Positions 4,232-39,050 of a stretch of DNA of 64,000 nt are shown one piece after another. The notes beneath the pieces were generated by a model, which saw nothing but the letters and a program-made list of their open reading frames with translations, did not search any database and had not been told where the DNA came from. Within the stretch, counting starts at the first letter, position 1. Each line of letters starts with the position of its first letter. The translations under genes were made by a program, and so were the position numbers. Source of the DNA: Octopus sinensis (Eukaryota); assembly GCF_006345805.1 (NCBI RefSeq), contig NC_043014.1, forward strand, positions 17,670,001 to 17,734,000. The letters are read 5' to 3'.

Positions 4232-5131
4232 TGAGGTGGTATCAAAAAGTTCCCAGACTAGTTCTGTAGCGCGCCAACTGATGGCAGCACACGATTGCGT
4301 GCGCAGTGAGAGCTAGCAGTGACCTTCATGAAGCAGTGAGTCGAGTAACATGACTGTCTTCTCTTCACAAGTTGTGAAATTTCTGTTTTAGTGATCACGT
4401 GTATGCAGTAGTCTGCGATTTTATCACAGACAGGAACAAAGAGCCAACACGTGAAATTTTGCGTTAAATTTGTGAAGTCTGCTGCAGAGACAATCAGCAT
4501 GCTTCGACAAACTTACGGTGACGAGGCAATGGGCCGTACGCAATGTTTCGAGTGACACTGGCGCTTCAAAAGCGCAAGAATGTCCCTGAAAGACGATGAG
4601 CCTTCTGGAAGACCTGTCACGTGCGTTACCACCGAGAATGTGATATGCATCGAGAATTCGTCGCCCATGGCAAGACTTAGTGGAAAGTTCTACTGAGACG
4701 TTTAGAAGCGTTTGAGAGAGAACATTCGACAAATGGGACCGGATCTGTGGAGCGCAAAGAATTGGATTGTTCACGACGACAATGCACTCTGTCACCGAGC
4801 TCTCCTCACTTGTGAGTTTCTCGCCCAAAATAACAAGGTATCGCCTCCTCACCCGCTCTATTCACCAGATCTATAAATTTCTATCTCTTCCCCAAGATGA
4901 AAATGCAACTCAAAGGTCGCCGTTTTAACTCCGTTGTCGAGATCCAGAGCGAATCACAGAAGGTCTTCGACTCACTTACGGGAAGCGACTTCCCGGCCGG
5001 ATTCCAATGGAAGCAGGAACGCTGGAACCGGTGTAGTGCTGCGCAAGGTAGCTACTTCAAAGGGAAACTAAGGTAAATAAGTTATTTTTCTTTTAACATA
5101 ACTACACCTGGAACATTTTGATACCACCTTG
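4232..5131 (+). mobile_element. internally deleted mariner transposon
   Basis: TIRs GAGGTGGTATCAAAAAGTTCC / GGAACATTTTGATACCACCTTG with TA flanks. Plus-strand transposase pieces (VKFCVK..ETISMLRQTYGDEAM..SGRP; WIVHDDNA..H; PHPLYSPDL). Confidence 0.85.
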
Positions 5132-5133
5132 TA

Positions 5134-5149
5134 TGTATGTATATATATA

Positions 5150-5222
<73 letters not shown>

Positions 5223-5263
5223 CAAGGTGGTATCAAAATGTTCTAGATATAGTTATGTTAAAA

Positions 5264-5308
<45 letters not shown>

Positions 5309-5396
5309 GTACAAGGTGGTATCAAAATGTTCTAGGTGTAGTTATGTTAAAACGATATATTATATATATATTATCTATATATATATATATATAATC

Positions 5397-5430
<34 letters not shown>

Positions 5431-5507
5431 TTATATATATAATATATGTATATATATAAATATCTACACATCGATATTATATATATACTATATATATATA
5501 TATATAT

Positions 5508-5552
<45 letters not shown>

Positions 5553-5850
5553 TATATCTATATATATATATATATTATATATGTTATAATATGATATAAT
5601 ATACAAGAGATATATATATTATACATATATACTATATATATATATCTATATAGTATACATATATATTATATATATATATATACCATATTATATACATATA
5701 TATATATACTATATAATAGATATATAATATATATATATTATATATACATATATATATATAAATAGTATACATATATATATATATATATATATCTATACAT
5801 ATATATATATATATATATTACAATATATAATATAATATTATATATATATA

Positions 5851-5918
<68 letters not shown>

Positions 5919-6029
5919 GTATATATATATATATTATATATATATATATATGTATATATATATAATACACATATATATATATATATATATAACATATAAT
6001 ATATATTATACATTATATATATATATATC

Positions 6030-6064
<35 letters not shown>

Positions 6065-6232
6065 ATATATATATATATATATATATTATATCTATATATA
6101 TATATATATATATATGTAATATATATATATAATATACCTATATATATACATATATACATATCATATATATATATATATATCTATCTTATATATATAATAT
6201 CTCATATATAATAATATAATATATATATACAA

Positions 6233-6263
<31 letters not shown>

Positions 6264-6281
6264 TATATATATATACATATC

Positions 6282-6317
<36 letters not shown>

Positions 6318-6763
6318 ATATATATATACAACATATATATATATATCTATAATATATATATATATCTATATATATCTATATATATATCTATATATATACA
6401 TCTATATATATATATATACATATATATATATTATATATACATATATATATATATTATCCACATATATATACTATATATATATATACCTATATATATATAT
6501 ATATTATATATATACATGTCTATCTATATATATATATATATATCTACATATATATGATCTCTATATATCTATACATATATTATATCTCTACTATATATAT
6601 CTATATATCATATATCTATATATCATAACATATATATATATATATATATATACATATCTATATACATATATATATCAATAATATATACATATATATATAC
6701 ATATATATAACATATATATATATCTATACATATATATATATACATATATATCTATATATATAC

Positions 6764-6830
<67 letters not shown>

Positions 6831-6899
6831 GAATATATCTATATATATAGACATATATATATTATAATATATATATACATAATATATATATATATCTAC

Positions 6900-6942
<43 letters not shown>

Positions 6943-7025
6943 ATATATATATATATACATATATATATTATATATATCTATATATATATATATATACATA
7001 TTATATATATATATATATATTATAC

Positions 7026-7056
<31 letters not shown>

Positions 7057-7169
7057 ATATATATACTATCTATATATATATATATATATATATCTATATA
7101 TATATATATATATTATATATACATATATATATATATATATAACATATATAATATATACATATATATATC

Positions 7170-7203
<34 letters not shown>

Positions 7204-7454
7204 CAATATATATATATAATATATATATATCTATATCTATACATATATATATATATATATATCTATATCTATCTCCTATATATATCTATATATATATCTT
7301 ATATATCATACATATACATATATATATATATATACATATATAATATATATCTATACATATATATATATATATATATATAGAGATATATATATACCTATAT
7401 ATATAATCTATATATCTATACCTATATATCTATTATATATATATATCATATATA

Positions 7455-7488
<34 letters not shown>

Positions 7489-7780
7489 TCTATATATATA
7501 TACTCTATATATATATAGCCTATCTATATATACTATACATATATATACATATATCTTATATCTACATCTATAATATATATATATATATACCTATCTATCT
7601 ATATCTATCTATATCCTCTATATACCATATATATCTCTACTATATATATATATATACATATTATATATCTATTCTATCTATATATATATATATCTATCTA
7701 TATTCACCTATATATCTATATATATATCTATCTCTATCTCCTTATATCTATATATATATATATATATATATAATATAATG
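5134..7780. repeat. very long degenerate (TA)n tract containing two solo mariner TIR copies
   Basis: ~2.6 kb of interrupted TA. TACAAGGTGGTATCAAAATGTTCTAG..GTTAAAACG occurs at ~5221 and ~5310. Confidence 0.9.
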
Positions 7781-8253
7781 TCCCTCCCCCACCCATGTAT
7801 GTATTTATGCATGTATGTGCGATAGAAAATGAATAAGTTAATAGAATCACAATGCTAATTGTAAACTAATAGTATTCTTTTTCATTAACGCGTAACTTAT
7901 ATTCCTATTCGTTTATTGTTTTTCTTTTGCACAAAAAATGGTATTACAATTTATCTATACTATTTTGATGGTTGGACCAGCTGTTTTCTCAACAATTGTC
8001 CTCTGTGCTAACATTTATTTAAATAGTATATTACCTTTGTTACTACAGCTGTCACTCTTGCTGAACCAATCGATATTACAGTGTATCTATATGATATGAT
8101 ATGTATATATATAAATATGGATGCATTCATATATGCATAACAAAAGAATCAACAAACTGTTGTTTTGAATAAATGGATATACGAAATTTACTTACTAAAC
8201 ATTTATTTTAGTTTCACTGGAAACATATACTGTGAATAGACCAGAGAATATTC

Positions 8254-15471: not shown

Positions 15472-15514
<43 letters not shown>

Positions 15515-15528
<14 letters not shown>

Positions 15529-15880
15529 AAACTGAGAATGTGTGTCTGTCTGTTTGTCTGTCTGTGTGTTTCTCTAAACTTGAGAACTACTCAACCAATT
15601 TCATTCAAATTTTACACATGCCTTACTTAGAGTCCGGGGAGTGTCATCGGCGAAAAAAAATGTTCAACTTCTTGCCTAGAGCGAGCCCATAGCAATATCA
15701 TATCTTCTCCACTATTTCAGTATTACATGTTAAAAGTGAAACAAAAACATTTCTCTATTTTATGTCAGATACTTTCACTTTAACAGTTATAATAACAATT
15801 GAATTATATGTAGTAAGTAATAATTAAAATCAAACTAAAGTATAATATAATCGTAACATAACAAAAGTAAAAATAGCAAT
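15515..15880 (+). mobile_element. possible 5' part of a non-autonomous Helitron-like repeat
   Basis: TATATATAAAA start followed by a (TCTG)n block, similar in organisation to the element at 1770. No 3' end assigned. Confidence 0.3.
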
Positions 15881-15904
15881 TGGTATGAAATTGCATCAAT
15901 GAAT

Positions 15905-16056
15905 TGAACTTGAATAAGTGGTTTCACATGAATGGGAATAAATCAAAAATAAAATTAGCGTGCAGAAATGGAATAGTCCAGATGGATAATAAAAATTTAA
16001 ATTAAAGAAAAGACTATTGTCTATAAAGTATACAATGTAGAGAAAAAAGGTCGCGT
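15905..16056 (+). pseudogene. 5' half of an interrupted Tx1-type ORF1 (host element)
   Basis: 16001-16056 translates as IKEKTIVYKVYNVEKKGRV, matching RRTIKYKVF (module 1) and NKTITYR (module 2). Upstream part is degenerate. Confidence 0.6.
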
Positions 16057-17729
16057 TTTTTTTTTGCGCTCTGTAAAATTCGGTTAAAAAAGAAAAAAGA
16101 ACAAAAAGTGAATTGTGGTTGCAGAATTGGAACGTCGTTTGGTGCGGTTTCGCGTCGCACTGGTTCTGTGCGTCACACGTTTTCTGTTAGGGAGGCCGTT
16201 TTCGGTCTGAGGCGACTATGAGCCGCCTCTACCAAACGGATGAGATGGAAGGGAGAAATTTCTCTGAAAATTCGTCGACATCTGAGGAGGAGTTGGCGGT
16301 GAAAAAAAATGGAAAGCACCTACGCAGGTATAACGAAGAAGTCAACAGAAAAAGAGATAGACCTGGCTAAGTTGACGGACTTCCAGGAGTTCATGAAGGA
16401 GGAGGAGAACGGAGAGGTTGAGCTGTTGCCTCTAGCAGGGCGCGGAGACTGGTTCCATCGTAGAACCATTAAATATAAAGTATTTATGAATGGAGGTAGA
16501 AAAATGGAAGTGTTTAACATGGAAGCAATTGAAGAGGCTTTCAAACAGACAGGAGAAGAAATTGTGTACATGACAAAAGGATTAGAATATGGAACCATAA
16601 CGGTACAATTTAAAAGTGAGAAAGCAGCCAGGAATATAGCAGCCAAGGTGGTGAGTACAGAAAAGTTTTACTTGTTCCTCTCGTATTTGAATATAAGGAC
16701 CACCAGAATTAGGGTGGAAGGAATACCTCCACACCTAGAGGGCGAATTAATAACGGCTGCGGTTATCAAAGGAAATGAAGATAAAGTGGACATCCTCCAC
16801 GCCATTATGAAATATGAAGGCGTGAGAGGTGCTACACTAGTAATGAACATACAGACGGAGGCGGAAGTTATAGAAAAGCTTACGGACAGTATAAAAACTG
16901 GAAATATTATTATGAGAGTGTGGGTGGAGGGTAGGGCGCCCAGGTGCTACAAGTGTGGCCTGAGGGGTCACATAAGAGCCTACTGCCCTCCCCCACCAAA
17001 GGAAAAAGAAAAGGAAATCGTCGCGGAAGCCCCAAAAGAGGAAGAAACCAAAGAGAACCAAACGGAAAAAGAAACGACAGAAGAAGAGGAGATGCAACAA
17101 GAGTGGGAAGAAGGAAGAAAAAAGAGAAAAAGAAAGAAAAAGAAAAACTGTGCGAAGCCCCAACCCACCCCAACACCACCCGCACCCTCTGAATCCCCCC
17201 CTCCCCCTGCAGACAGTGAACCCACCCGCTCCCCTCCAACAAGAAAACAAAAGAAAAATAATAATACATACAGACAAGTGTTTGAAAACGAACCCAGGCC
17301 GAACATTTATATTGTGACTGAACAGAAAGAGGTTGAAAGGGTAATGGAGGAGTATGAATGGTATGAAATGGATGGGACCAGATATGCAGTGCTGGAAAAG
17401 AAGAATATAGATGAGTTTGTGTTGAGGTGTGAAAGGGAGAATTGGGAGGTGAAAGATACAAGAATGAGCGATGAATTCGTGGAATATATGGAGGACAGTT
17501 TCGGAGTAAGAATGGATATGGATGGTCTTCGTATTGGGAATGAACATTCAGGTGACAGTGAAAACAAAAGGACAGATAAGTGATGCTGGCGGAGGGGGCC
17601 GTTAGCATCGCTTTCATATTATCATTTTTTCATTTTCATTTGCTCATAAATTTAATCATATTGTTCTATGTCCCCCATGTTTTGTTATGTCCGCCATTCT
17701 TCGTAGCCCCTGGTGGGTAATAAAGAAAT
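16057..17729 (+). mobile_element. Tx1/L1-clade ORF1-only non-autonomous retroelement (module 1)
   Basis: 5' UTR, a single ORF1, 3' UTR ending GCCCCTGGTGGGTAATAAAGAAAT. No ORF2. Confidence 0.75.
16309..17583 (+). CDS. gag-like ORF1 protein with CCHC zinc knuckle (module 1)
   Basis: 424-aa ORF with STYAGITKK, EGRAPRCYKCGLRGHIRAYC and a charged/Pro-rich linker. An upstream ATG at 16218 joins the frame if one A is removed from the A-run at ~16302-16309. Confidence 0.85.
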   Translation: MESTYAGITKKSTEKEIDLAKLTDFQEFMKEEENGEVELLPLAGRGDWFHRRTIKYKVFMNGGRKMEVFNMEAIEEAFKQTGEEIVYMTKGLEYGTITVQFKSEKAARNIAAKVVSTEKFYLFLSYLNIRTTRIRVEGIPPHLEGELITAAVIKGNEDKVDILHAIMKYEGVRGATLVMNIQTEAEVIEKLTDSIKTGNIIMRVWVEGRAPRCYKCGLRGHIRAYCPPPPKEKEKEIVAEAPKEEETKENQTEKETTEEEEMQQEWEEGRKKRKRKKKKNCAKPQPTPTPPAPSESPPPPADSEPTRSPPTRKQKKNNNTYRQVFENEPRPNIYIVTEQKEVERVMEEYEWYEMDGTRYAVLEKKNIDEFVLRCERENWEVKDTRMSDEFVEYMEDSFGVRMDMDGLRIGNEHSGDSENKRTDK

Positions 17730-17744
17730 AACATGGAGGAAATC

Positions 17745-19512
17745 TACCCACGTGTGTTGTTATCTGTGACTAGACAGTGAAATTTTGTTGTGTAAAGTGA
17801 TTAATATCGCGCGAGGCGTTTGCCTTCACGTGTGGAAACCTTCCGAAGAAGGTGAATTGACCCTCTAGTCATGGCGACTTACGCGGGGGTCACGGGAAAG
17901 AAAAATAATGATTCGTCGATAATCGTGAAGGATGTTTTCGTTGAGAAGAGTAAACTCAAAGAATATGAAAAGCTATTCAAAAGGGAGGGTGATAGCGTGA
18001 AGCTAATCCCCCCCGCGAAAGCAAAAGAGGACAAAGAAAACAAGACAATAACATATAGAACCCAAGACAAAAATACAAAGAAACTGGCAAGAGTGGAGAT
18101 AGCCGAAATCGAAAAATGTCTGGGAGACATAATGGGGAAATCGACCTACGTGAGTAGAGGCAAGAAATTTGGTACGGTGGAGGTGAGATGTGCAACGGAA
18201 GAAATTGCAGCCTCACTGGCTACCACTGTACTAAGAGCGGAAACATTTATAATGTGGCCCTCATACAAGGGAAGAAGAGGGGTCCGGGTTAAAATCCCGA
18301 ATATACCCCCAGAAGTGAAAACAGAATGGCTGGCAACAGCTATTCTAGGAGCAGCAGAAGAGGAAGTGGAGGTGGAATCCTTTAAGGAGTCCAACGCGAT
18401 AAACTGGAGAGGATATGGGGTAGAACTGTGTTTGATGGCCACAAAAGAGGACATTGAAAGGTTCCCCTACAGAATAGAAATTGAAGATGAGAAAACCCTC
18501 AGTGTAATTGTAGAGGGAAGAAAGCCAAACTGCTACTTGTGCGGGACAAGGGGGCACATTAAAAAAGAGTGCCCGTTATACGAATTCGTAGCGGAGTGCG
18601 AGCAGGAATTTGAAGAAAAGAAGAATACGGTAAATGAAAAAGAAAACATAGAAAAGGTAACAAAACAACAAGAGAAAAGAAATAATAAGTCAATGAAGGA
18701 AAAAGAAATAAAAGAAAAGAAAGAAATAGAACCAAAACAGAGTCAGGAAAAAAAAAAGGAAAAAGAAACAACAGGAAAAAAACAAGAGAGAGATCAGAAT
18801 CAAACGAAAAGAAAAGACGGCACACAAAAAGAAAAAGAAAAGGAACATAAAACACGAGAGAAAGAGAGAACAGACAAAGAACCAAAAAGACAAGAGAAGG
18901 AAGAAGAAAGAAAAGAAGGCAAAAAGAGAGAAAGAGAGAAACAAAGAGAGGAGAACAAGGAAGAAATAAGCCCGAAAAGAAAAACGAGGGAAAACGTAGG
19001 ACGGAAACAAGATTACTGCTTCTACAAGTTAGTAACCTTCCATTTCTGCCCTGAAATGAAAGAATTGACATGTAATATGGAGGGACATATATGGGTCAAC
19101 AGGATGACCGATCAGTGGCAGGAGACTGCTCTAATCCCCGAAGAAAGAGTCGCTGAGTTCCTCAGAGCTGCCGGAGAGAGTGTAACGTTTTACACGAGTG
19201 TTCGAGTGAGAGAGCGGCTGCCTGAGGGCTCAGTGATTGACTTTAGAGAATTGAAAACTATTATGAATACGTATAGAATTGTGAGAAGAGAGAGAAGAAA
19301 GAGAGAAAAAAAAATATTGTGAAATATATGTGACGAAAATGTACCTCTCGATTCCGGGGATCGAGTGGGCATTTACATCTCATTGTAAATATTCTTTCAT
19401 ATGTCATTTTTTACTTTTATTTTTTCCTTTTCTTGTCATTCGCTTTCTTATTTTAAGTTCCCCGATTGTATTGTCCCCTCTATGTTCGCCCCTTGTGGGT
19501 AATAATAAAATC
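17745..19512 (+). mobile_element. Tx1/L1-clade ORF1-only non-autonomous retroelement (module 2)
   Basis: 5' UTR, a single intact ORF1, 3' UTR ending GCCCCTTGTGGGTAATAATAAAAT. No ORF2. Confidence 0.75.
17871..19322 (+). CDS. gag-like ORF1 protein with CCHC zinc knuckle (module 2)
   Basis: Uninterrupted 483-aa ORF with MATYAGVTGKK, YVSRGKKFGTVEVR, EGRKPNCYLCGTRGHIKKEC and a long K/E-rich segment. Confidence 0.88.
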   Translation: MATYAGVTGKKNNDSSIIVKDVFVEKSKLKEYEKLFKREGDSVKLIPPAKAKEDKENKTITYRTQDKNTKKLARVEIAEIEKCLGDIMGKSTYVSRGKKFGTVEVRCATEEIAASLATTVLRAETFIMWPSYKGRRGVRVKIPNIPPEVKTEWLATAILGAAEEEVEVESFKESNAINWRGYGVELCLMATKEDIERFPYRIEIEDEKTLSVIVEGRKPNCYLCGTRGHIKKECPLYEFVAECEQEFEEKKNTVNEKENIEKVTKQQEKRNNKSMKEKEIKEKKEIEPKQSQEKKKEKETTGKKQERDQNQTKRKDGTQKEKEKEHKTREKERTDKEPKRQEKEEERKEGKKREREKQREENKEEISPKRKTRENVGRKQDYCFYKLVTFHFCPEMKELTCNMEGHIWVNRMTDQWQETALIPEERVAEFLRAAGESVTFYTSVRVRERLPEGSVIDFRELKTIMNTYRIVRRERRKREKKIL

Positions 19513-19742
19513 ACATGGAGGAAATCAATTTTTTGCGTTATTAGTAAGTTGATATATATTTTTGCTCTCGTACTATTATCTCTGTTATTATATACTGTTG
19601 GTCTACCTGTTTTTGTCTATTGTTATCTAACGGACGAAGTCAGCCTTCGCGCGAAGACTTCGCGTTGGTGTTCCCCCCTCAGTGGGGGAAAACTACAATT
19701 AATTTGGATTTACCAAAGGCTTGTTAAAGCCATTTGTTCAAG

Positions 19743-21146
19743 ATGGAGTCCCCCATCTCTTATTCACCCGTGACGAGCGAGGATGAATACCCGGCGTTGT
19801 CGCCAGGAAAAAAAGAGGCGTTGTCGCCAAGAAAAAAAGAGGCGTTGTCGCCAAGAAAAAAAGAGGCGTTGTCGCCGAAGAAAAAAGAGGCGGCGTCGCC
19901 CAAGAAAATGGAAAAACCAGTACCAGCATCAACTCCAGCAAAAAAATTCGCTGAAGTGGCTGGGAAAAAGATCAAAAAAATAAATATAGAAAATTTTAAA
20001 AAATTTGCAGACTGTGTAAAAAAAGAAGGCACAGAAGTGACTGTGGCCACAAACATACAAATACATGACGATATAGAAAAAAAAAATAATATATAAAACT
20101 TACGACACAACGAAAAAAATGATCCAAAAAATCGAAGAAAAAAAAATAGAGTTTTGTCTAAAACCTTTTATGGATAAAATAACGTATATAAACAGAGGAA
20201 AAAGATACGGCACAGTGGAGGTGCGTTTTACTACGGAGGAGATAGCGAAGAAACTATCGATGGAGCCAATCAAAGCGGAAAACATTTCTTACTACCATTG
20301 TACAAAGGAAAAAGGACGTCGAAAATTTCAATGAACAACATACCGCCAGAGGCAGATGCTGAATGTCTGGTGGCAGCAGTGATGGTAGGTCTGGAGGAAA
20401 AAATAAACATCCTCCAGGCCACAGTGGAGGAAGAGGAGTTTTGGAAAGGGCAAAAAATAGTGATAGCCATTCAGGCGGAGGTGCAAACACTGGAAGAAAT
20501 TCCAGAAACGGTAAAGATTAGTGAAGACGAGAAAATAACAGTTTTCGTGGAGGGCAGGAAGCCGAGGTGCTTCGGCTGCGGCAAGAAGGGTCATGTAAGG
20601 GCGGAATGCCAACCCCAACCCAAACCGCAGGAAGCACCTAAGCCAAAAGAAAAAGAAGATAATGTGTCACCAGAAGCAGCGTCGGACGGCCCAGAAGGGA
20701 AGACTGAAGGTGTGGAGGTGACGGTGTGACAGCAGAACCAGCGGCGGAGGAAAAAAAGAGCGAGGAAAAAAGATAAATGAGGAGGGGTGGGCAAAAATTA
20801 CCGGAAGGAAAAAAAAAAAACGGAAACCACCCCTCCCAGAGTAATTTTAAAAAAGAAAAAAGAGTCAATGAACTCGTATATGGCCGTAAAGGCAGCAAAT
20901 AGCAGACTCGGAAACGTGTTGGCAGCCATGGCCAAAGTGGAGAAAGTAGTGAAAAAAAACGACTTTGTAATTTACAGAATAGGCCGGAAGGATTACGGGC
21001 GGATAAAGTCAGAATTCTTCCATGACGTAGGCCCACTTAGATTGGATGTGACATCTCCACATATATTCGAGGGCCTACGTCAGACTCCCCCACGAGGCCC
21101 AGAAAAAGAGTTAGAAGAACAAGAGAAAACCGAACCACTGATATAA
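19743..21146 (+). pseudogene. ORF1 of module 3 (frameshifted)
   Basis: N-terminal (EALSPKK)-type repeats, KFAEVAGKK, YINRGKRYGTVEVRF, EGRKPRCFGCGKKGHVRAEC. Frameshifts at ~20090, ~20290 and ~20730. Confidence 0.8.
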
Positions 21147-21154
21147 GGTAAGTA

Positions 21155-24100
21155 ATGGATTACATTTATGTTGGTGTTTGAATGTGCGCGGCCTGGGAGC
21201 AGACTGGAAGCAAGGTCGCTTCCTGCATGATATCAGGTCCGCGTAATTTAGATGTTATTGTTGCTACAGAAACCCGGTTAGAGGGGCCAAGAGGTCTACT
21301 CCCGCTGTTTGACGGCTACGAGAGAGTTTTTTCTCTCCTGGCAGTCCTACAGGCGGGAGTGGGGTGTTGGTCCTATTAAAAAGAAACCGGGTTTCTGAGA
21401 AAAAGTTAATTTTTGCAGATCCAGAAGGTAGGCTGGTCGTCATGGATTTGACGTTCAGTAACGGTAAAGTTATCAGACTGGTTGCAATTTACGCACCCAA
21501 CCATACAGGGCAAAGTGATTATTTTCGTGAACTAGAAAACTTTCTTGGTACTTCGCATTCATTAGTGGTGCTAGGAGACTTTAACACAATTTGCAAAGCG
21601 GATGTAGATTATGTTGGCTCGTGTCCAGATAGAAAAGGCAACAGTGGCTTCATGGAACTGCTAAGCCGCTTTGAGCTAGCAGATCCTTATAGGCTGGAAT
21701 TTCCGAACGCTCCATTGTGGACATGGTCAAACAGCGACGGATCTTCCAGGTCATATTTAGATAGAATACTAATTAGAAAAGTAGACAGTAAAATAGCTAA
21801 GTGTCCACAGTTTTACCCGATCAGCTACAGTGATCATAAAATGGTCACTTGTAAGCTTGACATAGATAAGGTTAAAAATAGAGGATCCGGGTACTGGAAA
21901 CTTAATACGTCCCTTTTGGCGATTAAGGAGTACAAAGACGGATTAGGAATATAATTCAGAGGGCACTATCTGGTACCATCATTAATAACAAATGGTGGTA
22001 CGCCCTCAAACGAGCCATCAAGTTTGAGTCTATTAGATATAGCATAGGAGTAGTGGCTAGAGAGGCTAGAAGGGAAACTACTCTAGTTAAGGAATTAGAG
22101 GAAGCCATGAAAACTGGCTCTGCGGCTCAGGTGGCGTCCAAGAGACTGGTGTTAAACCAGCACCTCGAGGCCAAACACATGGGCTGCATTGTCAGGGCTA
22201 GAATCCGCCATATGGGATGTGAAGGAATCAACGCCGTGAGATGGGCCCGAGTGGTGGCAGCTCGGCATGGTAACGATGCCACGATTCGATCTTTGACGAA
22301 CCAACAAGGTGAGTTGATAAACGAACCCGAGGAGATGTGTGAGGCCTTTCAGGAGCACTTCGCTCAGCTTTTCGGTGAGTGCGGCGGACTGGATAGGAGG
22401 AGGGCCTTTACGGACCTACTCGACGGGCTGCCGCGCTTATCGGGGCGAGATGCGGAGGGCTGTGAAGGGCCAATCACGCCTGAGGAGGTGGTTGAGGCAA
22501 TGGCGGACTGCGGCGCGGGCAAGGCGCCGGGTTTGGATGGTCTACCCTATGAGTTATATAAGAGTATGCCAGACTTGTTCGGGCACCTACTGGCGGAGGT
22601 CTACGCGAACTGGCAGCAGAACGGGCTTATACCCAGATCTGTGCGCCGGGGAGTAGTGACTCTCGTCAGAAAGGACCCGAGCAAGGGGGAGTGCATTGAT
22701 AATTTCAGGCCATCACTCTACTAAACACAGAGTTGAAGATTTTGGCCAAAGTGTTATCGAAAAGATTGGCGCGTGTCGCGGATGGTCTGATCGGAGAGGC
22801 ACAGACATGTGCCGTTCCGGGCAGATCCATTCAGGATAATCTCCATCTAATGCGGTACACTATAGAGGGGTTTAATAGTGATTCTGGCAAGGGTGGGGCA
22901 CTGGTCCAATTAGACCAATCTAAAGCTTTTGATAGGGTCGACCATCGTTACCTGGTATCTGCCCTGGCACAGTTCGGGCTGAGCCTTGGCTTCCTCAGGT
23001 GGATTATCCAAATGTATGATAACATCGACTCGGTAGTTCGGGTGAACGGCTTCTTGTCGAAGCCGTTCAAAATCAAACGCTCGGTTCGTCAAGGGTGTCC
23101 GCTCTCCCCGCTTTTGTACGTGATGGCTCTCGAGCCATTACTGCGAAAACTGAGCGGCATCCCGAGACAGCCAGGTAATGGAAAATCAGTATCAGCGTAC
23201 GCGGATGACATCACCATCATCGTAACCGAAATGGACCACCTATGTAAAGTAGGCAAGGCCATAGAGGTTTACGAGACGGTGACAGGAGCAAAAGTTAATC
23301 GCGAAAAGTCAGTCGGCTTGCAACTCGGCACCTGGAGAGGCAAGTCGATGCCTCCTGACAGCGTCGTGGGACGTTGGACGGAGGGTCCGATTAAACTGCT
23401 AGGGGTCTGGTTCGGTCCAGACCTCCAAATAGAGAAGAATTGGGGCGAGGTAACGAGCAAGGTGGCTGCAGTAGCCAAGACCTGGTCTTGGCGGTGGCTA
23501 TCCCTGAAAGGGAGGGCGGAGGTGGCCAATGTGTTTATCGCATCGGTTATCACCTACCGCCTTTCCGTCGTTCCTTGCCCTGATTCGTGGTTGATCAAGT
23601 TGGAAAGACAGCTCTTCTACTTCTTGTGGAAGGGCGGGAAACCACTTGTGAAACGCTCTACTTGCTGTCAACAACCGTTAAAGGGTGGGCTAGGGATGCC
23701 TTGGCTGATGATGCGCAGACATGCGCTGAGGTTAAGACATCTGTGGCTCTACCTGGATGGTGAACGGGTGTGGTCTTCGCTAGCAAAACTGATGTTTCCC
23801 AAGTTCACTAGTTTCGGTGGATGGGAAACCTGGCTGAATCGTAGATCGAAACTTGGTACTTGGTACACGGAGTGTCGCAAGGCTCTCCTGCTATTCCGTC
23901 GCTCGGGCAACGCCTGCGGTGGGGGTTCCACCACATTCTTCTATAGAGGGTTGGTAGAGGCGGAATGTGAAGATACCTTGGGGGAAACCCTAGGTCTCGA
24001 CGATAATCAGCTGGCCAGTCTGTTCCGACGTACGTTCGAGCCGAGGACACTGGACAACTTCCAGAAGTCTCTGGCATGGCAATGCTACAGAGGAGCTCTA

Positions 24101-24549
24101 CCTGTTCGGGATAAACTCGCAAGGCACGGTGGCCAAGACAGTCCGATATGTCCAAGATGCGGGCGGGATAGGGAAACCGTCCCGCACGCTATTGTTCATT
24201 GTCCGGACGTGTCTGAGGTGTGGGTTTATGCCGAACACCTGTTGTCAGGTACACGAAGAGTACAGCTGTCGACTGAGTCGATTACAAAAATTGACCCACC
24301 GGATTTCCTCGTGAATGAAGGTAAGTTTCGTTTTCTCGTTGTAGTAGCAATTGCGAAAGAGGTGATATGGAAGACGAGAATGAAGGTTTACAGTCAGGCA
24401 AGTTCATCTCCGGCCCTGGTTTGATGAATTATTTCATCTTTCACCTGAAAAGGAAGATAGGGCTGGAAAGAATATGCCTGACTAGGAGAGTGTATGAAGA
24501 ACGATGGAAGGATGTAGCACGAAAGTTGCGAGTGAAAGATACAACATAA
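21155..24549 (+). pseudogene. ORF2 of module 3: APE endonuclease, reverse transcriptase, C-terminal CCHC (frameshifted)
   Basis: ETRL, IYAPN, LGDFN, TW, SYLDRIL, SDH; GKAPGLDG, QSKAFDRVDH, SVRQGCPLSPLLY, YADD; CPRC..ETVPHAIVHC. About five single frameshifts. Confidence 0.92.
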
Positions 24550-24794
24550 ATGTAATACCAAGCGCAACCAAAAGTATCAGTGGGGAGGCGGGGCTCGTGG
24601 GGTCCGAGCTAAACCCGCACCCACTCCACCCGTAACGTCTTCCGGTCTGTCCCATCATTCGATTTCTGTCCATTTATTGTAATTCATGAAAAATTTTTAA
24701 ATTCGATTTATTGTAAAAACCCATTCGTGTGTCTGACCCCATCATCAGATTGTATTGTCCCATCTTTGTTCGCCCCTTGTGGGTAATAATAAAA

Positions 24795-25115
24795 CAACAT
24801 GGAGGAAAGCACCTTCGAAAAGTGTCTTGGTGCGACTATGAAAGATATCTAATCAGAGGCGGTAAATTCGCCACAATAGAAGCAAGGTTCGAGTCAACGG
24901 AGCGTGCAAGGGAGTACTCGACTCGAACTTGCTAAGTGGAAATATTTTATTTTTACCTTTATATCTGGGACGTAAGACGTCCCGGAAAAAATTTTAAATG
25001 CCCCCCCCCCCCCCGAAATAGAGGTAGGCTGGATTGTAGCCACATTTCTATACAAGAGGGAGGACAAGATACAATTGATCGAAATTACAAGAGACGGGCT
25101 AACAATTCCAGTCTG
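24795..25115 (+). pseudogene. 3' continuation of the interrupted host ORF1
   Basis: NMEESTFEKCLGATMK / YLIRGGKFATIEARFESTERA / GNILFLPLYLGRKTSR / ILNAPP..EIEVGWIVATFL..EDKIQL is collinear with the three module ORF1s. Confidence 0.75.
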
Positions 25116-26101
25116 TTATATATTTTGAGTATTGTTATCACTAGCGATATCAAGATATAACTTTGTACTTTGTATTTTATGTGTAGATGTATATATATAG
25201 ATGTACATATAATATGTATACATATATATACACATATATACATGCACTAGCACTATGACCCGGCAACAACGGGTCTTTAATGCTAGTATATATATAAAAT
25301 ACAGAATGGGACAAGAACGCAAAACATCCGGACAACTAGGTGATACAAAAAGGGACAACAATACATCCACACACACACACACACACACACAGACAGACAG
25401 ACAGACACACACACACAGACAGACAGACACACACACACAGACAGACAGATAGACACACACACACATATACACACGCACTGTCATGTCTTCGTAATTAGAT
25501 ATGTTACCTTTACTGCTTAACTGTTCTGAACCAACACCTTCAAGTATCTTTTACTTGTTTCAATCTTTCGACTGCGGCCATTTTAGGGGTACCACCTTAA
25601 AGAGCATAGTCAAGCAAATTGACTCCAGTATGTATTTTTCTAAAAGCCTGGTATTGACTCAGTCGGTTTCTTTTGCCGACCCTCTAAGTTACAGAGACGT
25701 AAACAAACCAACACCAGTTGTCAAACGATGGTTGAGGCAAAACACACACACACTACACACACACACGCACACACATACAAATACTCACAAGCACACACAC
25801 ACACGGTATGTATGTATGAATGTATGCATGTATGCATGCATGCATGTATGTATGTATGTATGTATGTATGTATGTATGCATGCATGCATGCATGTGTGTG
25901 TATGCATGCATGTGTGTGTATGTATGTATGTATGTATGTATGTATGTATAAAGATAGGATTCAACGATCAAGGAGTAGGAAGTTAGTGAGCTTCAAGCAA
26001 TCCGTTGAAGATATAGAAAAACAACTTTCAGGAACAATAGTAGCTTATTGGCGCAGAAGTTTGAGAATTTTTTTCCGTATCGAGGTACGATAAGCTGAAA
26101 A

Positions 26102-35214: not shown

Positions 35215-35749
35215 CCCCGTTTATCTCCTCACTCCTTAACAATTGGTTGTTATGTTCCTGTAAATTAGCGGTTCGGTAGAACAGACTGATAGAATGAGTA
35301 TGCGACTTAAAAAAAACGTAAGTACTGGAGGCGATTTGTATTGGCTAAAACCCTTCAAGGTGGTGCTCCAGCATGGCCGCAGTCTAATAACCGAAACAAG
35401 TAAAAGATAAAAGATACAGAACAAAAAAATGAGAAAAATAATAAATAAATAAAACACTTTGAATTGACGAGGTTCCAAGCGCAGATGATTCAGAAAGAAG
35501 ATTAATAAGTCATGTTCAGTTTAACACTCAACATAGTTATTTCTTCTTTATCAGAAAGTTTTTAAATTCCAAAGTTCCACAGATTTTTTTAAACAACAAA
35601 ATATTTACCCGATAAAAATTAAAATTAAAATTAGACTGACATTAGGATGTCAGTGTTCGGAGGACAGTTTACCAAGAAAATAGTGTTAATAATGAATGTA
35701 GTCTCTTGGCTAATTTAGATATTCTTCCCTAATCTAGGCACAAGGCATG

Positions 35750-36340
35750 ACATTTATTGGGGAGGGTGCCAATCGATTAGATCGACCCAGCACACAACTG
35801 GTACTTAATTTATCAACCCCGAAAGGATGAAAGGCAAAGTCGACCTCGGCGCAATTGAAACTCAGAACCCAAAGCCAGACGAAATACCACTAAGCATTTC
35901 GCCCGGCGTGCTAACGTTTCTTATTTCTTTACTGCCCACAAGGGGCTAAGCACAGAGGGGACAAAAAAGGACAGACAACAGGATTAAGTCGATTATATCG
36001 ACCCCAATGCATAACTGGTACTTATTTAATCGACTCCGAAACGATGAAAGGCAAAGTCAACCTCGGCAGAATTTGAACTCAGAACGTAAAGATTGACGAA
36101 ATACCTATTTCTTTACTACGCACAAGGGGCTAAACACAGAGAGGACAAACAAGGACAGACAAACGGATTAAGTCGATTATATTGACTCCAGTGCGTAACT
36201 GGTACTCAATTTATCGACCACGAAAGGATGAAAGCTAAAGTCGACCTCGGCGGAATTTGAACTCAGAACCTAAAGACAGACAAAATATCGCTACGTATTT
36301 CGCCCAGCACGCTAACGTTTCTGCCAGCTCGCCGCCTTGC
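35750..36340 (-). mobile_element. tandem cluster of three SINE family A copies
   Basis: Repeated head, central block and GCCCCTTGTGGG tail. Confidence 0.8.
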
Positions 36341-36374
36341 TAATTTAGGTATTACAAAAGTAATGTTAACACAA

Positions 36375-36730
36375 ATTCCTTTCTCTTTTATCTTTTAATT
36401 GTTTCAGTCATCTGACTGGGGCACCACCTTGAAAGGTTTTAGTCAAACAAATCGACCTCAGTACATGTTTTTTAAAGTCTTGTACTTATTCTATCGGCCA
36501 CTTTTGCTGAATCATTAAGTTACGGTTCCAAGTGGTGGTGGGACACACACACACACACACACACAATATACGACGGGCTTCTTCCATTTTCTTTCTACCA
36601 AATCTACTTACAAGGCTTTAGTCGGTCTGAGGTCATAGCAGAAGACACTTGCTCAAGGTGCCATGCAGTGGAACGGAACCCTTAACCAAGTGGTTGGGAA
36701 GCAAACTTCTTACAACATAGCCACACCTGC
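36375..36730 (-). mobile_element. SINE family B (tRNA-derived) copy
   Basis: Reverse complement of GTGGCT.TGT.GTAAG..GGTTC.GT.CCACTGCATGGCACCTTG.GCAAGTGTC. Other copies at ~33987-34150(+), 35210-35415(+), 50388-50540(-). Confidence 0.7.
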
Positions 36731-38189
36731 ACCTTTCCCTTAGATTTATCATTAGTAACAAGTTTATAGGATATCATGCCAAACATGTGGGTTGCCTGTA
36801 AGGATATTTATTAGCAAAAAATCTGCTTGTAATAATGATTTCAAATTTTATCACAAGGCCAGCAATTTCGGGGGATGGCATAAGTGGATTCCAGTGCTCA
36901 ACTGCTACTTATTCCGTTGACCCTGAAAGGATAGGCCAAGTCGATTCTGCCTGTTCGCTAATTTTTTTGCAAGTAATAATAATCCTTTTTACTATAGGCA
37001 CAAAACCTGTACTCAACTGGCCCATATTTTATCAACCCCAAATGGATGAAAGGTAAAGCCCATCTACCAATTTTTAGTGAAAATTGGCCATCAGAACATA
37101 ATGCACGTTCTAACTTACAGAGTGACATGTAGAATTATATGATTATACCATACCAGTAATCATGGGAGAGACGATTTTTAGTAAAGTTTATAAAGACATT
37201 TGCAGTTGTCAATGATGCAAGGCTTTAAATTCTTTAGCAATCTCTTGATAGAAAATTGTGTAAAAAAAAAAAGATAAAGTGAAAAAAAGTGGTGTGAAAA
37301 CATTTGCAAATCTAAAAAGTCAGAAAAAACAATTTTGTCATCCACCCACCCTCCACTCAGTGTTTGTAAAAAAAAATGTGCTGAGATCATAAATCTACTT
37401 TCAGTCTCCCCATCTCTCTCTCCACTTATATTGGTTTCAAATTTTGACATAAAGCCAGCCAGTTCGGGGGAGAGGGTAAGTCATTTACATCAACTCCGGT
37501 GATCAACTTGTTTTACCAACTTGAAAGGATGAAAGGCAAAATCGACCTCATCGGAATTTGGACTGAGAACATAAAGACGGACGAAATACCACTTAACATT
37601 TTGCCCGACGTGCCAACAATTCAGCTAGCTCATTGCATTCTCCCTACTTATGTTGATGTGAGAATCTGCAGCTTTGATGCTGCATTTGAACTTTACTCAT
37701 TATCATGTATAATTATAATAAACACTATATTCCTAAAGTAGCAGTTTATTCCCTCCTACGAAAACAAAACAAAAATAAATAAATAAAGAAAGAAACTTGT
37801 AAAGGCCCCGCAGTTCAGTTTGTCTCTTGGACATCAACAACCTCAGGGCAGGGCTTGACTGTAAGGTATTACATTTTTTGATAAACATACAATTTGAATC
37901 TCGCGGTTACACCACAAGTTTCTTTATCTGTCTGTGGGTAGAAAAAGTTGGATCGATCTGATTTATGTCTGGTCATCTTAAGCCTTCACAAAGATCTAAG
38001 AAGACCAAGCCTAGTCAGATTCAGAACCATAAATATTGTTATATGTTTACATGTTTATTCATTTATGAATCGACTAACCAAACAAAAAAAGAAATCTATG
38101 CACGACCTACATTTTTACTGAACAAAATCAAATTTATCCCATATCAAATAAAGGTGATTGAATTTAGGTCAAATATTGATTTCAAAATT

Positions 38190-39050
38190 TAGCACAAGGC
38201 CAGCAATTTCGGGGGAGGGGGTAAGTCGATTACATTTACCTCAATACTTAATAGACACTTATTTTATCGACCCCGCGAGGATGAAAGGCAAAGTTGATGT
38301 CGGTGAAATTTGAACTCAGAATGTAAAGATAAACGAAATGCCGATTATGTAAATAATGTACATAATTCCTCATCTCTTAAATAAAGAACTGTATTATCTA
38401 GGCAGAAAGCTAAAATTTTGGGGGAGGGGACCAGTCAATTAAATCTACCCCAGTACATAACTGGTACTTAATTTAACAACCCCGAAAGGCTGAAAGGCAA
38501 AATTGACTTTGGCGGAATTCGAACTCAGAATGTAAAGACAGATGAAATACCTATTTCTTTACTACCCACAAGGGGCTAAACACAGAAGGGACAAACAAGG
38601 ACAGACAAACGGATTAAGTCGATCATATTGACCCCAGTGCGTAACTGGTACTTATTTAATCGACCCCGAAAGGATGAAAGGCAAAGTCGACCTCGGCGGA
38701 ATTTGAACTCAGAACGTAGCGACAGACGAAATACTGCTGAGCATTTCGCCCGACATGCTAACGATTCTGCCAGCTTGCTGCCTTGCTGCCCTATTTAAGT
38801 TGAATATTAAAAGAAAAAATGTTCGGCATGAGATTTTCTTTTACAATATTTCGCATTTTAGGCAGCGAGCCAGCAGAAATGTTAGCATGCCGGGCAAAAT
38901 GCTTTGCTGTATTTCCTCTGTCTTTACGTTCTGAGTTCAAACCCCACTGAGGTCAACTTTGCCTTTCATCCATTTGTGTACTGGAGTCACTCTAATCGAT
39001 TGGACCCCTCCCCCAAAATTTCGGGCCTTGTGCCTAGAGTAGAAAAGAAT
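38190..39050. mobile_element. cluster of SINE family A copies, both strands
   Basis: Same diagnostic blocks; tail at 38552-38600 on the minus strand. Confidence 0.8.

What the first reader, a model, noticed from the sequence alone, without database searches (positions are those of the whole stretch)
15905..25115. Tx1-clade retroelement array inserted precisely into the ORF1 of a relative: apparent own-family targeting
Seen: joining 16056 to 24795 gives ...ggt cgc gtc aac atg gag gaa agc..., i.e. TIVY-KVYNVEKKGRVNMEESTF-EKCLG. That is 18 residues between TIxY and EKCLG, exactly as in module 2 (TITY-RTQDKNTKKLARVEIAEI-EKCLG). A fourth ORF1 is therefore split with no codon lost by an 8.74-kb insert of three head-to-tail modules. 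Each module is followed by the same target-side sequence: AACATGGAGGAAATC (17730), ACATGGAGGAAATC (19513), CAACATGGAGGAAAGC (24795); only the last continues into the host ORF. Established: Tx1-clade APE elements are often sequence-specific (Xenopus Tx1L inserts into a DNA transposon; others use snRNA/tRNA genes or microsatellites). Inference: this family targets a conserved site in ORF1 of related LINEs and builds arrays. This could be serial insertion with ~14-bp duplications or mobilisation of a pre-formed composite. I know of no described case of this, but cannot search. Caveat: there is no target copy at the leftmost junction.
Basis: partly seen in the sequence, partly recalled or inferred. 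Interest (0 to 1): 0.9.

Follow-up and report, generated by a model that had tools for sequence, protein, structure and literature searches.

The report
Stacked octopus LINEs at one hotspot
Three different octopus retroelements were inserted one after another at the same nick in a small dispersed host repeat; this is a clear new example of a known behaviour of target-preferring LINEs, not a new rule of LINEs attacking their relatives' genes.

Summary
The sequence facts hold. Window 16050-24794 carries three head-to-tail non-LTR elements that share a ~45-nt 3' tail. M1 and M2 encode only ORF1. M3 is a decayed endonuclease plus reverse-transcriptase LINE of the L1/Tx1 group. Each is followed by (A)ACATGGAGGAAA, and the flanks do contain a decayed ORF1 relic.

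Six related loci from the Octopus vulgaris assembly change the reading:
- The "host" is not a LINE copy. It is a ~1-kb dispersed repeat (H) found on several chromosomes, and it carries a ~360-bp ORF1 relic.
- ACATGGAGGAAA is a target-site duplication. It is also present at the left edge where M1 is absent.
- The same element families form stacks around other duplicated sequences: CAATTCCAGTCT(GTTATA) in a deleted H variant, and CAGAAACGT... inside a SINE. Solitary copies lie elsewhere.
- M2 copies do not cluster by locus, their junctions are locus-specific, and duplication lengths are nested. This indicates serial, independent insertions at one nick, newest on the left.

Serial insertion with duplications is therefore supported. 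Own-family ORF1 targeting is not. Close precedents exist: Tx1L in Tx1D, SINEU-3/Tx1 stacks in Mariner-N4_AMi, and R1 arrays. Moderate interest; a new member of a known kind.

The parts
15515..16049 (+). Left arm of host repeat H. It starts just after a (TA)n run and ends ...GTAGAGAAAAAAG. Positions 15998-16049 are the first part of the ORF1 relic (TIVYKVYNVEKK).
   Evidence: 92-95% identical to the left arms in L003, L006, L007, L009 and L010, with unrelated outer flanks. ORF1 profile hit across the junction.
16050..17729 (+). M1: ORF1-only non-autonomous retroelement. 5' UTR starts at GTCGCGT + T-run. ORF1 is intact at 16309-17583 (424 aa). The 3' UTR ends ...GCCCCTGGTGGGTAATAAAGAAAT. It is the newest unit, seen only at this locus, with no left duplication.
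   Evidence: The 5' end is homologous to the M1-like elements in L005 and L008. Absent from L003 and L010.
17730..17742 (+). Target-site duplication copy 1 (AACATGGAGGAAA).
   Evidence: The same sequence is present at the left edge of the stack in L003 and L010.
17743..19512 (+). M2: ORF1-only non-autonomous retroelement. ORF1 is intact at 17871-19322 (483 aa, CCHC zinc knuckle). The tail ends ...GGGTAATAATAAAATC.
   Evidence: 98-100% identical proteins are annotated in O. vulgaris. Eight copies in L003, at least 8 in L004 and one in L010.
19513..19524 (+). Target-site duplication copy 2 (ACATGGAGGAAA).
19525..24794 (+). M3: decayed autonomous LINE, the oldest unit. The 5' end is TCAATTTTTTGCG. 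The ORF1 relic is ~19753-21146. The ORF2 relic is 21155-24549, with the endonuclease in 21364-21954 and RT plus zf-RVT in 22733-24424, broken into at least 5 frames. The tail ends ...GGGTAATAATAAAA(C).
   Evidence: Pfam Exo_endo_phos, RVT_1 and zf-RVT. The nearest solved structures are human L1 ORF2p. ORF2 is 99.0-99.5% identical between this copy and those of L003, L004 and L010.
24795..24807 (+). Target-site copy 3 (AACATGGAGGAAA), the original host copy. It continues into the host sequence GCACCTTCGAAAAGTG...
   Evidence: The same junction is seen in L004 and L010.
24795..25286 (+). Right arm of host repeat H. The ORF1 relic runs to ~25125 with frameshifts. The second insertion site used in other loci (CAATTCCAGTCTGTTATA) is at 25104-25121. 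The arm ends with the hairpin GACCCGgcaacaaCGGGTC (25257-25275) followed by CTAG (25283-25286), next to a TA-rich flank.
35700..38810 (-). SINE copies that share the LINE 3' tail (GCCCCTTGTGGGTAGTAAAGAAAT). Their tails are at 38576-38551, 36130-36105 and 35946-35921, and another is at 27424-27399. They form head-to-tail runs of their own and are the presumed small partners of the same LINE machinery.

Best explanation
The block is a stack of three retroelements of one 3'-tail family. M3 is an endonuclease/RT LINE of the L1/Tx1 group. M2 and M1 are ORF1-only elements that must borrow its machinery.

Each element integrated by target-primed reverse transcription at the same bottom-strand nick of a ~1-kb dispersed host repeat, H. 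Each event duplicated the 12-18 nt to the right of the nick. This regenerates an intact target (host left flank plus duplication) at the left end of the stack, so the next element lands there. The stack therefore grows leftward, with M3 oldest, then M2, then M1, and every unit is followed by a copy of ACATGGAGGAAA.

The nick lies inside a ~360-bp ORF1 relic carried by H. The preferred target is this site of H, not ORF1 genes of relatives in general.

Shown: the anatomy, the duplications on both edges, independent insertions at several loci, and different duplicated sequences at other sites.

Inferred: leftward growth, and that the endonuclease (or another feature of the ribonucleoprotein) is what prefers the site.
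For: 1. Same architecture at six other places. These lie on five chromosome records (OX597814, 816, 820 twice, 821, 833) of the O. vulgaris assembly GCA_951406725.2, with unrelated outer flanks: H-left, then ORF1-only units, then one M3-like LINE, then H-right.

2. The duplication is present at the left edge where M1 is absent. L003 reads ...GAGAAAAAAGATTTG AACACGTGTCGGAAATC|M2. L010 reads ...GAAGATTTG AACACATGGCTCCAAGCT|M2|CACATGGCTCCAAGCT|M3.

3. The junction sequence is locus-specific while element bodies are not.
- Left-hand M2 copies of L003 and L004 differ by only 0.6-0.9%, yet they sit between different junction variants.
- Within L003, left and right copies differ by 4-5%, and the right ones group with the window's M2.
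- Near-identical L004 units have different 5' ends.

4. Nested duplication lengths point to re-use of the same nick in the left copy.
- Deleted H variant: 12 nt before M2', 18 nt before M3.
- SINE site: 15 nt before the M1 relative, 19 nt before the M2 relative.
- SINE dimer: 23 nt and 33 nt.
- In L010 the M2 duplication includes filler created at the M3 5' junction.

5. H arms are 92-97% identical in a star-like pattern, whereas M3 ORF2 is 99.0-99.7% identical among the X-type loci. M3 5' thirds fall into at least 5 types across loci. Several M3-like LINEs therefore entered pre-existing H copies independently.

6. All units, the SINE and an Argonauta relative share the ~45-nt tail.

7. Precedents for the same behaviour.
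Against: - The sample is small and biased. Loci were found through annotated M2-like ORF1 proteins, so stacks are over-represented. No empty H copy and no genome-wide census could be obtained.
- Some adjacent L003 units differ by only 0.2-0.5% and share identical junctions, so part of that array may have grown by unequal crossing-over.
- Singleton substitutions are very few, and M3 is mosaic between loci. Gene conversion between loci therefore cannot be excluded as a contributor.
- No common motif is evident among the different nick sites, so what is recognised is unknown.
- Every stack seen has exactly one autonomous element, always rightmost. A simple hotspot model does not predict this.
Confidence: 0.72

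Rival explanations
1. One reading: the family specifically recognises a conserved site in the ORF1 gene of related LINEs (own-family targeting) and so builds arrays inside relatives.
For: - Both insertion sites used in H (at window 24795 and 25104) lie in sequence derived from a LINE ORF1.
- M1's own ORF1 has a similar string (TTTAACATGGAAGCAA) at the homologous position.
Against: - The host is a ~1-kb dispersed repeat with non-LINE ends and only ~120 decayed ORF1 codons.
- Related stacks occur in a SINE head. A solitary M1-like copy sits in unrelated DNA.
- The ACATGGAGGAAA string is absent from the deleted-H stacks.
- That string varies by 3 or more bases between successive insertions in L003 and L004.
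- None of the ~30 genuine ORF1 copies in the fetched loci is interrupted at the homologous site.
Confidence: 0.08
2. A pre-formed composite (H plus array) was copied around the genome as one unit, by H's own transposition or by segmental duplication. Array length then changed only through unequal crossing-over, with no repeated targeting.
For: - The whole H-M2-M3-H architecture recurs at several loci.
- The M2-M3 junction is identical in the window, L003 and L004.
- Three adjacent L003 units are 0.2-0.5% apart with identical junctions.
Against: - H arms are 3-10% diverged, while M3 ORF2 is 1% or less diverged among the same loci.
- M3 5' thirds are of different types in different loci, and L010 has a different M3 5' junction.
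- M2 copies cluster across loci, not within them.
- L004 units with 0.1% body divergence have different 5' ends and junction variants.
- M1 is present at one locus only.
Confidence: 0.1
3. Resident-directed stacking. New copies of this LINE/SINE system are drawn to the regenerated target just upstream of any resident family member, whatever the target sequence. The draw could come from RNA-DNA pairing, local chromatin or transcription. The H hotspot would then be a consequence of a first, chance M3 insertion rather than of endonuclease specificity.
For: - Same-nick re-use with nested duplications is seen at four unrelated sequences: the two H sites, the SINE head and the L010 SINE dimer.
- No shared motif is evident at the nick sites.
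- Every stack has exactly one autonomous element, at the far right, with only ORF1-only elements added later.
- The duplicated sequence can change by several bases without stopping further insertions.
Against: - At least five different M3-type LINEs each entered an H copy first. That already requires a preference for H itself.
- There is no known mechanism.
- The sample is small and selected for arrays.
- With about 12% of the genome made of SINEs, some double hits are expected from a moderately specific endonuclease.
Confidence: 0.2
4. Assembly artefact, or a single integration event in which the reverse transcriptase jumped between three RNAs.
For: Template jumping by LINE reverse transcriptases is established (my own knowledge). 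Repeats are also prone to mis-assembly.
Against: - The same junctions occur in an independent chromosome-level assembly at six further loci.
- Template jumping cannot place copies of target DNA between units or produce nested duplication lengths.
- Units differ in age and type.
Confidence: 0.03

Closest known systems
SINEU-3 and Tx1 LINE copies stacked at one site of the DNA transposon Mariner-N4_AMi in crocodilians (Kojima 2015, PMC4494074)
   Same: - A LINE/SINE system prefers one site in an abundant, older, non-autonomous DNA element.
- Tandem insertions sandwich the target-site duplication and are interpreted as sequential insertions.
- Copies of different families (SINEU, Tx1) are stacked at the same host.
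- The 'hitch-hiking on the host' alternative was raised and rejected using independent 5' truncations.
   Different: - Here the stacked units are a full LINE plus 1.7-kb ORF1-only elements rather than snRNA-headed SINEs.
- Stacks reach at least 8 units.
- The host site lies in an ORF1 relic.
- The preference is not shown to be as strict as the 90% reported there, because no census was possible.
Xenopus Tx1L inserted in Tx1D (composite Tx1 elements)
   Same: A LINE of the L1/Tx1 group sits at a defined site inside a dispersed DNA-transposon-like repeat, forming composite elements.
   Different: - The Tx1L endonuclease is biochemically shown to nick its target. Nothing is shown here.
- Tx1D is piggyBac-like, whereas H has Helitron-like ends (unproven).
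- I know of no multi-unit hetero-family stacks described for Tx1L (my own knowledge).
Double insertion giving tandem transposable elements, e.g. the Drosophila R1 array with 33-nt rDNA duplications between units (McGurk and Barbash 2018, PMC5932611)
   Same: - Head-to-tail units are separated by a copy of the target-site duplication.
- They arise from repeated insertion at one site.
- They can later expand by unequal exchange.
   Different: - The R1 target is a functional rRNA gene and the units belong to one family.
- Here three families are involved, with an ordered age gradient and locus-specific drift of the duplicated sequence.
HAL1 ('half-L1') ORF1-only derivatives of mammalian L1
   Same: M1 and M2 keep an intact ORF1, lack ORF2, and share the 3' end of an autonomous LINE. 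They are presumably mobilised in trans. The HAL1 comparison rests on my own knowledge.
   Different: - A different clade and a different ORF1 type (CCHC knuckle).
- M1 and M2 ORF1s are only ~28% identical to each other, so at least two such lineages coexist.

Membership tests
APE-type non-LTR retrotransposon, L1/Tx1 group (M3) | N-terminal apurinic-like endonuclease, central reverse transcriptase and C-terminal zinc-binding region in ORF2 | tested here: met
   Pfam Exo_endo_phos 1.5e-8, RVT_1 1.7e-27, zf-RVT 4.6e-9. The best solved-structure matches are human L1 ORF2p, at 1e-25 for the RT and 4e-19 for the endonuclease-to-RT region.
APE-type non-LTR retrotransposon, L1/Tx1 group (M3) | ORF1 protein with a CCHC zinc knuckle upstream of ORF2 | tested here: met
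   zf-CCHC in M2 ORF1. The M1, M2 and M3 ORF1 regions are homologous at 27-44% identity.
Tx1 clade proper | RT-domain phylogeny placing the element with Tx1/Keno/Kibi rather than L1 | not testable with these tools
   No named reference LINE sequences were available. O. vulgaris is reported to hold 13 recently active L1-Tx1 families, which makes the label plausible but is not a test.
Target-specific LINE (Tx1L/Tx1D type) | Insertions at one defined nucleotide position of a repeated host sequence, at independent loci | tested here: met
   Seven H loci carry stacks at the same nick, 5-8 nt after GAGAAAAAAG. M3 subtypes, junctions and unit numbers differ between loci.
Target-specific LINE (Tx1L/Tx1D type) | The great majority of family copies reside at the target | tested here: inconclusive
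   Tail-bearing relatives also lie in a SINE head (L005), unrelated DNA (L008, L005:1254) and a microsatellite (L006:28181). The sample is ~268 kb and biased, and no census was possible.
Target-specific LINE (Tx1L/Tx1D type) | The element's endonuclease nicks the target sequence specifically | not testable with these tools
   This needs a biochemical assay.
Double-insertion / stacked tandem transposable elements | A copy of the target-site duplication between units and at both outer edges | tested here: met
   Met in L003, L010, L006, L007, L009 and L005 and in the L010 SINE dimer. In the window the left outer copy was lost at the M1 insertion.
Double-insertion / stacked tandem transposable elements | Units are independent insertion events (different families, different 5' ends) | tested here: met
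   Three families are stacked in the window. L004 units have distinct 5' ends. The M2 tree does not cluster by locus.
ORF1-only non-autonomous LINE derivative (HAL1-like) for M1 and M2 | Intact ORF1, no ORF2, and a 3' end shared with an autonomous LINE | tested here: met
   ORF1 is 424 aa in M1 and 483 aa in M2, followed by only 146 and 190 nt of 3' UTR. A ~45-nt tail is shared with M3.
Helitron (for host repeat H) | 5' TC, 3' CTRR, a subterminal GC-rich hairpin, and insertion between A and T without duplication | tested here: inconclusive
   A|TCTTTATATATA... appears at the left end in L003, L006, L007 and L010. GACCCGgcaacaaCGGGTC + 7 nt + CTAG|T appears at the right end in 5 loci. The flanks are (TA)n, so the A/T rule carries little information. 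No empty site or autonomous partner was examined.

The most novel reading that the evidence does not exclude
This LINE/SINE system may have a built-in stacking rule. Once any member has inserted, later members (chiefly ORF1-only parasites and SINEs) would be directed to the regenerated nick immediately 5' of the resident copy, irrespective of target sequence. An autonomous LINE would thus 'seed' a site that its parasites then pile onto.

This would explain three observations:
- exactly one autonomous element at the right end of every stack;
- tolerance to changes in the duplicated sequence;
- same-nick re-use at four unrelated targets.
Probability: 0.18. Interest if true: 0.7.

Novelty: new member of a known kind. 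Interest (0 to 1): 0.4.

Why it matters
- It documents, in a cephalopod, a LINE group with a strong preference for one site in a dispersed host repeat.
- It identifies two lineages of ORF1-only parasites and a very abundant SINE that share the LINE's tail.
- The stacks act as a layered record. Successive duplications and unit subtypes preserve the order of insertion and the state of the target at each step. This could be used to date waves of LINE activity in octopus genomes, where LINEs and SINEs make up about a quarter of the DNA.
- It warns annotators. These ORF1 copies are annotated as cellular 'uncharacterized proteins', and some gene models span 10-21 kb of stack.
- It removes a more exciting but unsupported claim of own-family gene targeting.

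Tried and rejected
- Exact look-ups of the M1 and M2 ORF1 proteins found nothing.
- The M1 homologue search returned only four distant hits, so M1's copy number and age remain unknown.
- A search for terminal inverted repeats around H found only microsatellite matches.
- No further or empty H copies were found in ~268 kb of fetched sequence.
- ARAGORN found no tRNA-like gene in the SINE region.
- The shared tail does not fold better than shuffles, with z between 0 and -1.7.

Models considered and rejected:
- ACATGGAGGAAATC as the 5' terminus of M2 and M3. The M1 and M3 5' ends share TTTTTTGCG without it, and the string changes with the locus.
- 3' read-through carrying the flank with the RNA. 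Near-identical M2 bodies carry different junction variants at different loci.
- Insertion next to the previous element's tail, with growth to the right. The nested duplication lengths and unit order contradict this.
- Multi-RNA template jumping in one event. It cannot copy target DNA between units.
Full report
**What is in the window**

Reading 15500-25600 confirms three head-to-tail units. Each ends in the conserved tail GCCCCT(T/G)GTGGGTAATAA followed by a short A-rich end. A search for the tail allowing 3 mismatches finds seven matches against 0.01 expected. Three are on the plus strand (M1, M2, M3). Four are on the minus strand and belong to SINE copies.

ACATGGAGGAAA occurs exactly three times in 64 kb, each time immediately after one of the three plus-strand tails.
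- M1 (16050-17729) has only an intact ORF1 of 424 aa.
- M2 (17743-19512) has only an intact ORF1 of 483 aa, with a CCHC zinc knuckle.
- M3 (19525-24794) has a decayed ORF1 and an ORF2 with Exo_endo_phos, RVT_1 and zf-RVT domains, split into at least five frames.

The three ORF1s are homologous but distant, at 27-44% identity. Among solved structures, M3's ORF2 is closest to human L1 ORF2p. M3 is therefore an APE-type LINE of the L1/Tx1 group. Tx1-clade membership itself could not be tested.

**The flanks**

A profile built from seven ORF1 proteins of these families hits the joined flanks in four collinear pieces. These cover profile positions 47-165, lie in three different frames, and total 36.9 bits; the best of 300 shuffles scored 1.9. 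The flanks therefore do hold a genuine but decayed ~360-bp ORF1 relic, and the insertion point lies inside the first block.

**Species and related loci**

M2's ORF1 is 98-100% identical to proteins annotated in Octopus vulgaris. M3's RT is ~60% identical to proteins from Argonauta hians and other sources. I fetched eight O. vulgaris loci around such proteins. Six of them carry the same architecture as the window, with unrelated outer flanks:
- L003: H-left, eight M2 units, then M3.
- L004: at least eight M2 units, M3, then H-right.
- L010: H-left, one M2, M3, H-right.
- L006, L007 and L009: H-left, one to three ORF1-only units (M2', ~70% identical to M2, and in L009 also an M2), an M3-like LINE, then (seen in L006 and L007; L009 ends inside M3) only the last ~190 bp of H-right.

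The 'host' is thus a ~1.0-kb dispersed repeat, which I call H. It is bounded on both sides by TA-rich sequence or (TA)n runs. Its left end reads A|TCTTTATATATATAAAACTGAG. Its right end carries a GC hairpin, 7 nt and then CTAG|T. These ends look Helitron-like, but that is unproven.

**ACATGGAGGAAA is a target-site duplication**

Where M1 is absent, the left edge of the stack carries the sequence:
- L003 reads ...GAGAAAAAAGATTTG AACACGTGTCGGAAATC|M2.
- L010 reads ...GAAGATTTG AACACATGGCTCCAAGCT|M2|CACATGGCTCCAAGCT|M3.

In the window, GTCGCGT (16050-16056) sits where these loci have (AAG)ATTTG. It matches the 5' end of an M1 relative in L005 (GGTCGTGG followed by the same T-run and ACGCTCTGTAAAATTCGG). 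The M1 insertion removed 5-8 host bases and made no duplication, which explains the 'missing' left copy.

**The same elements use other sites**

In L006, L007 and L009, H has an internal deletion that removes the ACATGGAGGAAA site and most of the relic. The stack sits 8 nt after the same GAGAAAAAAG, and every unit is followed by CAATTCCAGTCT(GTTATA). That sequence equals window 25104-25121 and is again present at both edges.

In L005, an M1 relative and an M2 relative (~72% identical to M1 and M2) are stacked inside a SINE. CAGAAACGT(C/T)A(G/C)CAC... appears on the left edge, between the units, and continuing into the rest of the SINE.

Other relatives lie elsewhere:
- L008 holds a solitary M1-like copy in unrelated DNA.
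- A short M1-like 3' fragment is followed by an A/T run (L005:1254).
- A diverged LINE tail is followed by an ATCT microsatellite (L006:28181).

The junction repeat is therefore whatever lies to the right of the local nick. It is not a fixed recognition string.

**Serial, independent insertions, newest on the left**

A tree of 16 M2 units does not group them by locus.
- The three left units of L003 are 0.6-0.9% from the left units of L004 but 4-5% from the right units of their own array.
- Those right units group with the window's M2, at 2.0-2.6%.
- The junctions are nevertheless locus-specific: CACGTGTCGGAAATC throughout L003, and CACA(T/G)CGAGGAAATT-type variants in L004.
- L004 units that differ by 0.1% in the body have different 5' ends.

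Duplication lengths are nested:
- 12 nt before M2' and 18 nt before M3 in the deleted-H stacks.
- 15 nt and 19 nt at the SINE site.
- In L010, M2's duplication includes filler bases created at the M3 5' junction.

This pattern is what is expected if each new element uses the same bottom-strand nick in the left copy of the previous duplication, with a variable top-strand cut. It excludes addition on the right. M1 has an intact ORF, is leftmost, and is absent from the other X-type loci, which fits the same order.

**Was H targeted repeatedly, or copied with its cargo?**

H arms are 92-97% identical between loci in a star-like pattern. M3 ORF2 is 99.0-99.7% identical among the window, L003, L004 and L010. 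The 5' third of M3 comes in two types:
- Window and L010 share one type; L003 and L004 share another. The two types are 78-88% identical in the ORF1 part.
- The three deleted-H loci each carry a further type, 70-88% identical.
- L010 also has its own M3 5' junction.

Several different M3-type LINEs therefore entered pre-existing H copies. That is real site preference.

Some caveats remain. Singleton substitutions are few and the mosaic pattern leaves room for gene conversion. Three neighbouring L003 units are nearly identical, with identical junctions, so unequal crossing-over may have contributed there.

**What remains unexplained**

- I could find no shared motif among the nick sites.
- The duplicated sequence changes by several bases between successive layers, far more than the element bodies do, without stopping further insertions.
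- Every stack has exactly one autonomous element, always at the right end.
- Same-nick re-use also occurs at unrelated sequence. One example is a SINE dimer in L010 that sandwiches a 23/33-nt duplication.

These points leave open a less ordinary reading, in which resident copies themselves attract new insertions. I give that about 0.18 to 0.2.

**Comparison with what is known**

The closest precedent is Kojima 2015 (PMC4494074). In crocodilians, SINEU-3 and Tx1 LINE copies are inserted at one site of the DNA transposon Mariner-N4_AMi. [quoted passage not shown]

Xenopus Tx1L in Tx1D is the classical composite. The Drosophila R1 array with 33-nt rDNA duplications between units, and the general 'double insertion' route to tandem transposable elements, are described by McGurk and Barbash 2018 (PMC5932611).

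A 2026 repeat annotation of O. vulgaris lists L1-Tx1 and Helitron families as recently active and SINEs as 11.6% of the genome (PMC13282606). My term search of that paper found no mention of these stacks.

**Verdict**

The reconstruction 'no codon lost' is not correct. The finding is a well-resolved new example of a known kind. Added points of interest are the hetero-family stacks of up to eight or more units, the two ORF1-only parasite lineages, the tail-sharing SINE, and a layered record of insertion order. Interest 0.4.

Noticed in passing
window 38810-38551(-), 36340-35700(-), 27600-27399(-): An abundant SINE shares the LINE's 3' tail (GCCCCTTGTGGGTAGTAAAGAAAT). It forms head-to-tail runs in which the downstream copy starts at recurrent internal points: GGTATTTCGTC (three times) and AGAAACGTTAGC. 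These could be nick hotspots inside the SINE, in-register joining, or a dimeric subfamily. ARAGORN sees no tRNA in the region.
   Followed up: partly
L010 960-400 (minus strand): A full-length SINE and a 5'-truncated SINE sit in tandem. TATTGTGTACTCTCTTTTCCTAA (23 nt) lies to the left of the first. The longer ATATATTGTGTACTCTCTTTTCCTAACCTTGCAAT follows both tails. This is the same nested-duplication signature as in the LINE stacks, at an unrelated target.
   Followed up: partly
L004 405-12855; L003 4260-18520: The 13-15-nt duplicated sequence between M2 units changes by substitutions and small indels from layer to layer. Examples are ACATGGAGG, ACATCGAGG, ACATGCGG and ACAGCGAG. The 1.7-kb element bodies differ by 2% or less. 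This suggests error-prone synthesis or repair at the 5' junction.
   Followed up: no
window 15515-15535 and 25257-25289; L003 3700-3730; L006 8770-8790 and 16500-16530; L007 6660-6680 and 16390-16415; L010 8620-8640 and 16760-16795: Host repeat H has Helitron-like ends (A|TC... at the left; GC hairpin + 7 nt + CTAG|T at the right). At most loci it is embedded in (TA)n microsatellite on both sides.
   Followed up: partly
window 19525-21150 versus L003 18520-20120 and L004 12870-14470: M3 copies that are at least 99% identical in ORF2 are only 78-88% identical in the ORF1 region. Two types exist: window and L010 versus L003 and L004. This looks like modular exchange of the 5' UTR/ORF1 part between LINE lineages.
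   Followed up: partly
L006 10001-20335; L007 10001-31523; L003 4667-16485: ORF1 copies in the stacks are annotated as cellular genes ('uncharacterized protein LOC118764671' and others). Some gene models (P0128, P0129) span 10-21 kb of stack, apparently splicing pieces of different units together.
   Followed up: no
protein P0006: A 466-aa protein that a source labels as a zinc-binding domain-containing protein from a Herbaspirillum metagenome-assembled genome is 53% identical to M3's ORF2 C-terminal part. It is probably animal LINE contamination in a bacterial bin.
   Followed up: no
window 5100-7800: A ~2.7-kb block has extremely low G+C (11.5% in 6001-8000) and strong negative GC skew. It gives many TA-rich low-complexity matches to the TA-rich part of H's right arm.
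   Followed up: no
L007 6680-6853 and 6864-7329: The left arm of H is partly duplicated in tandem at this locus.
   Followed up: no
L001 10020-10290 and 10425-10650: In Argonauta hians, two successive 3' UTR-like segments each end in ...GG(C/T)TAA(G/T)AAAGAAAT. The first follows the RT gene. This may be a similar tail-to-tail stacking in another octopod.
   Followed up: no
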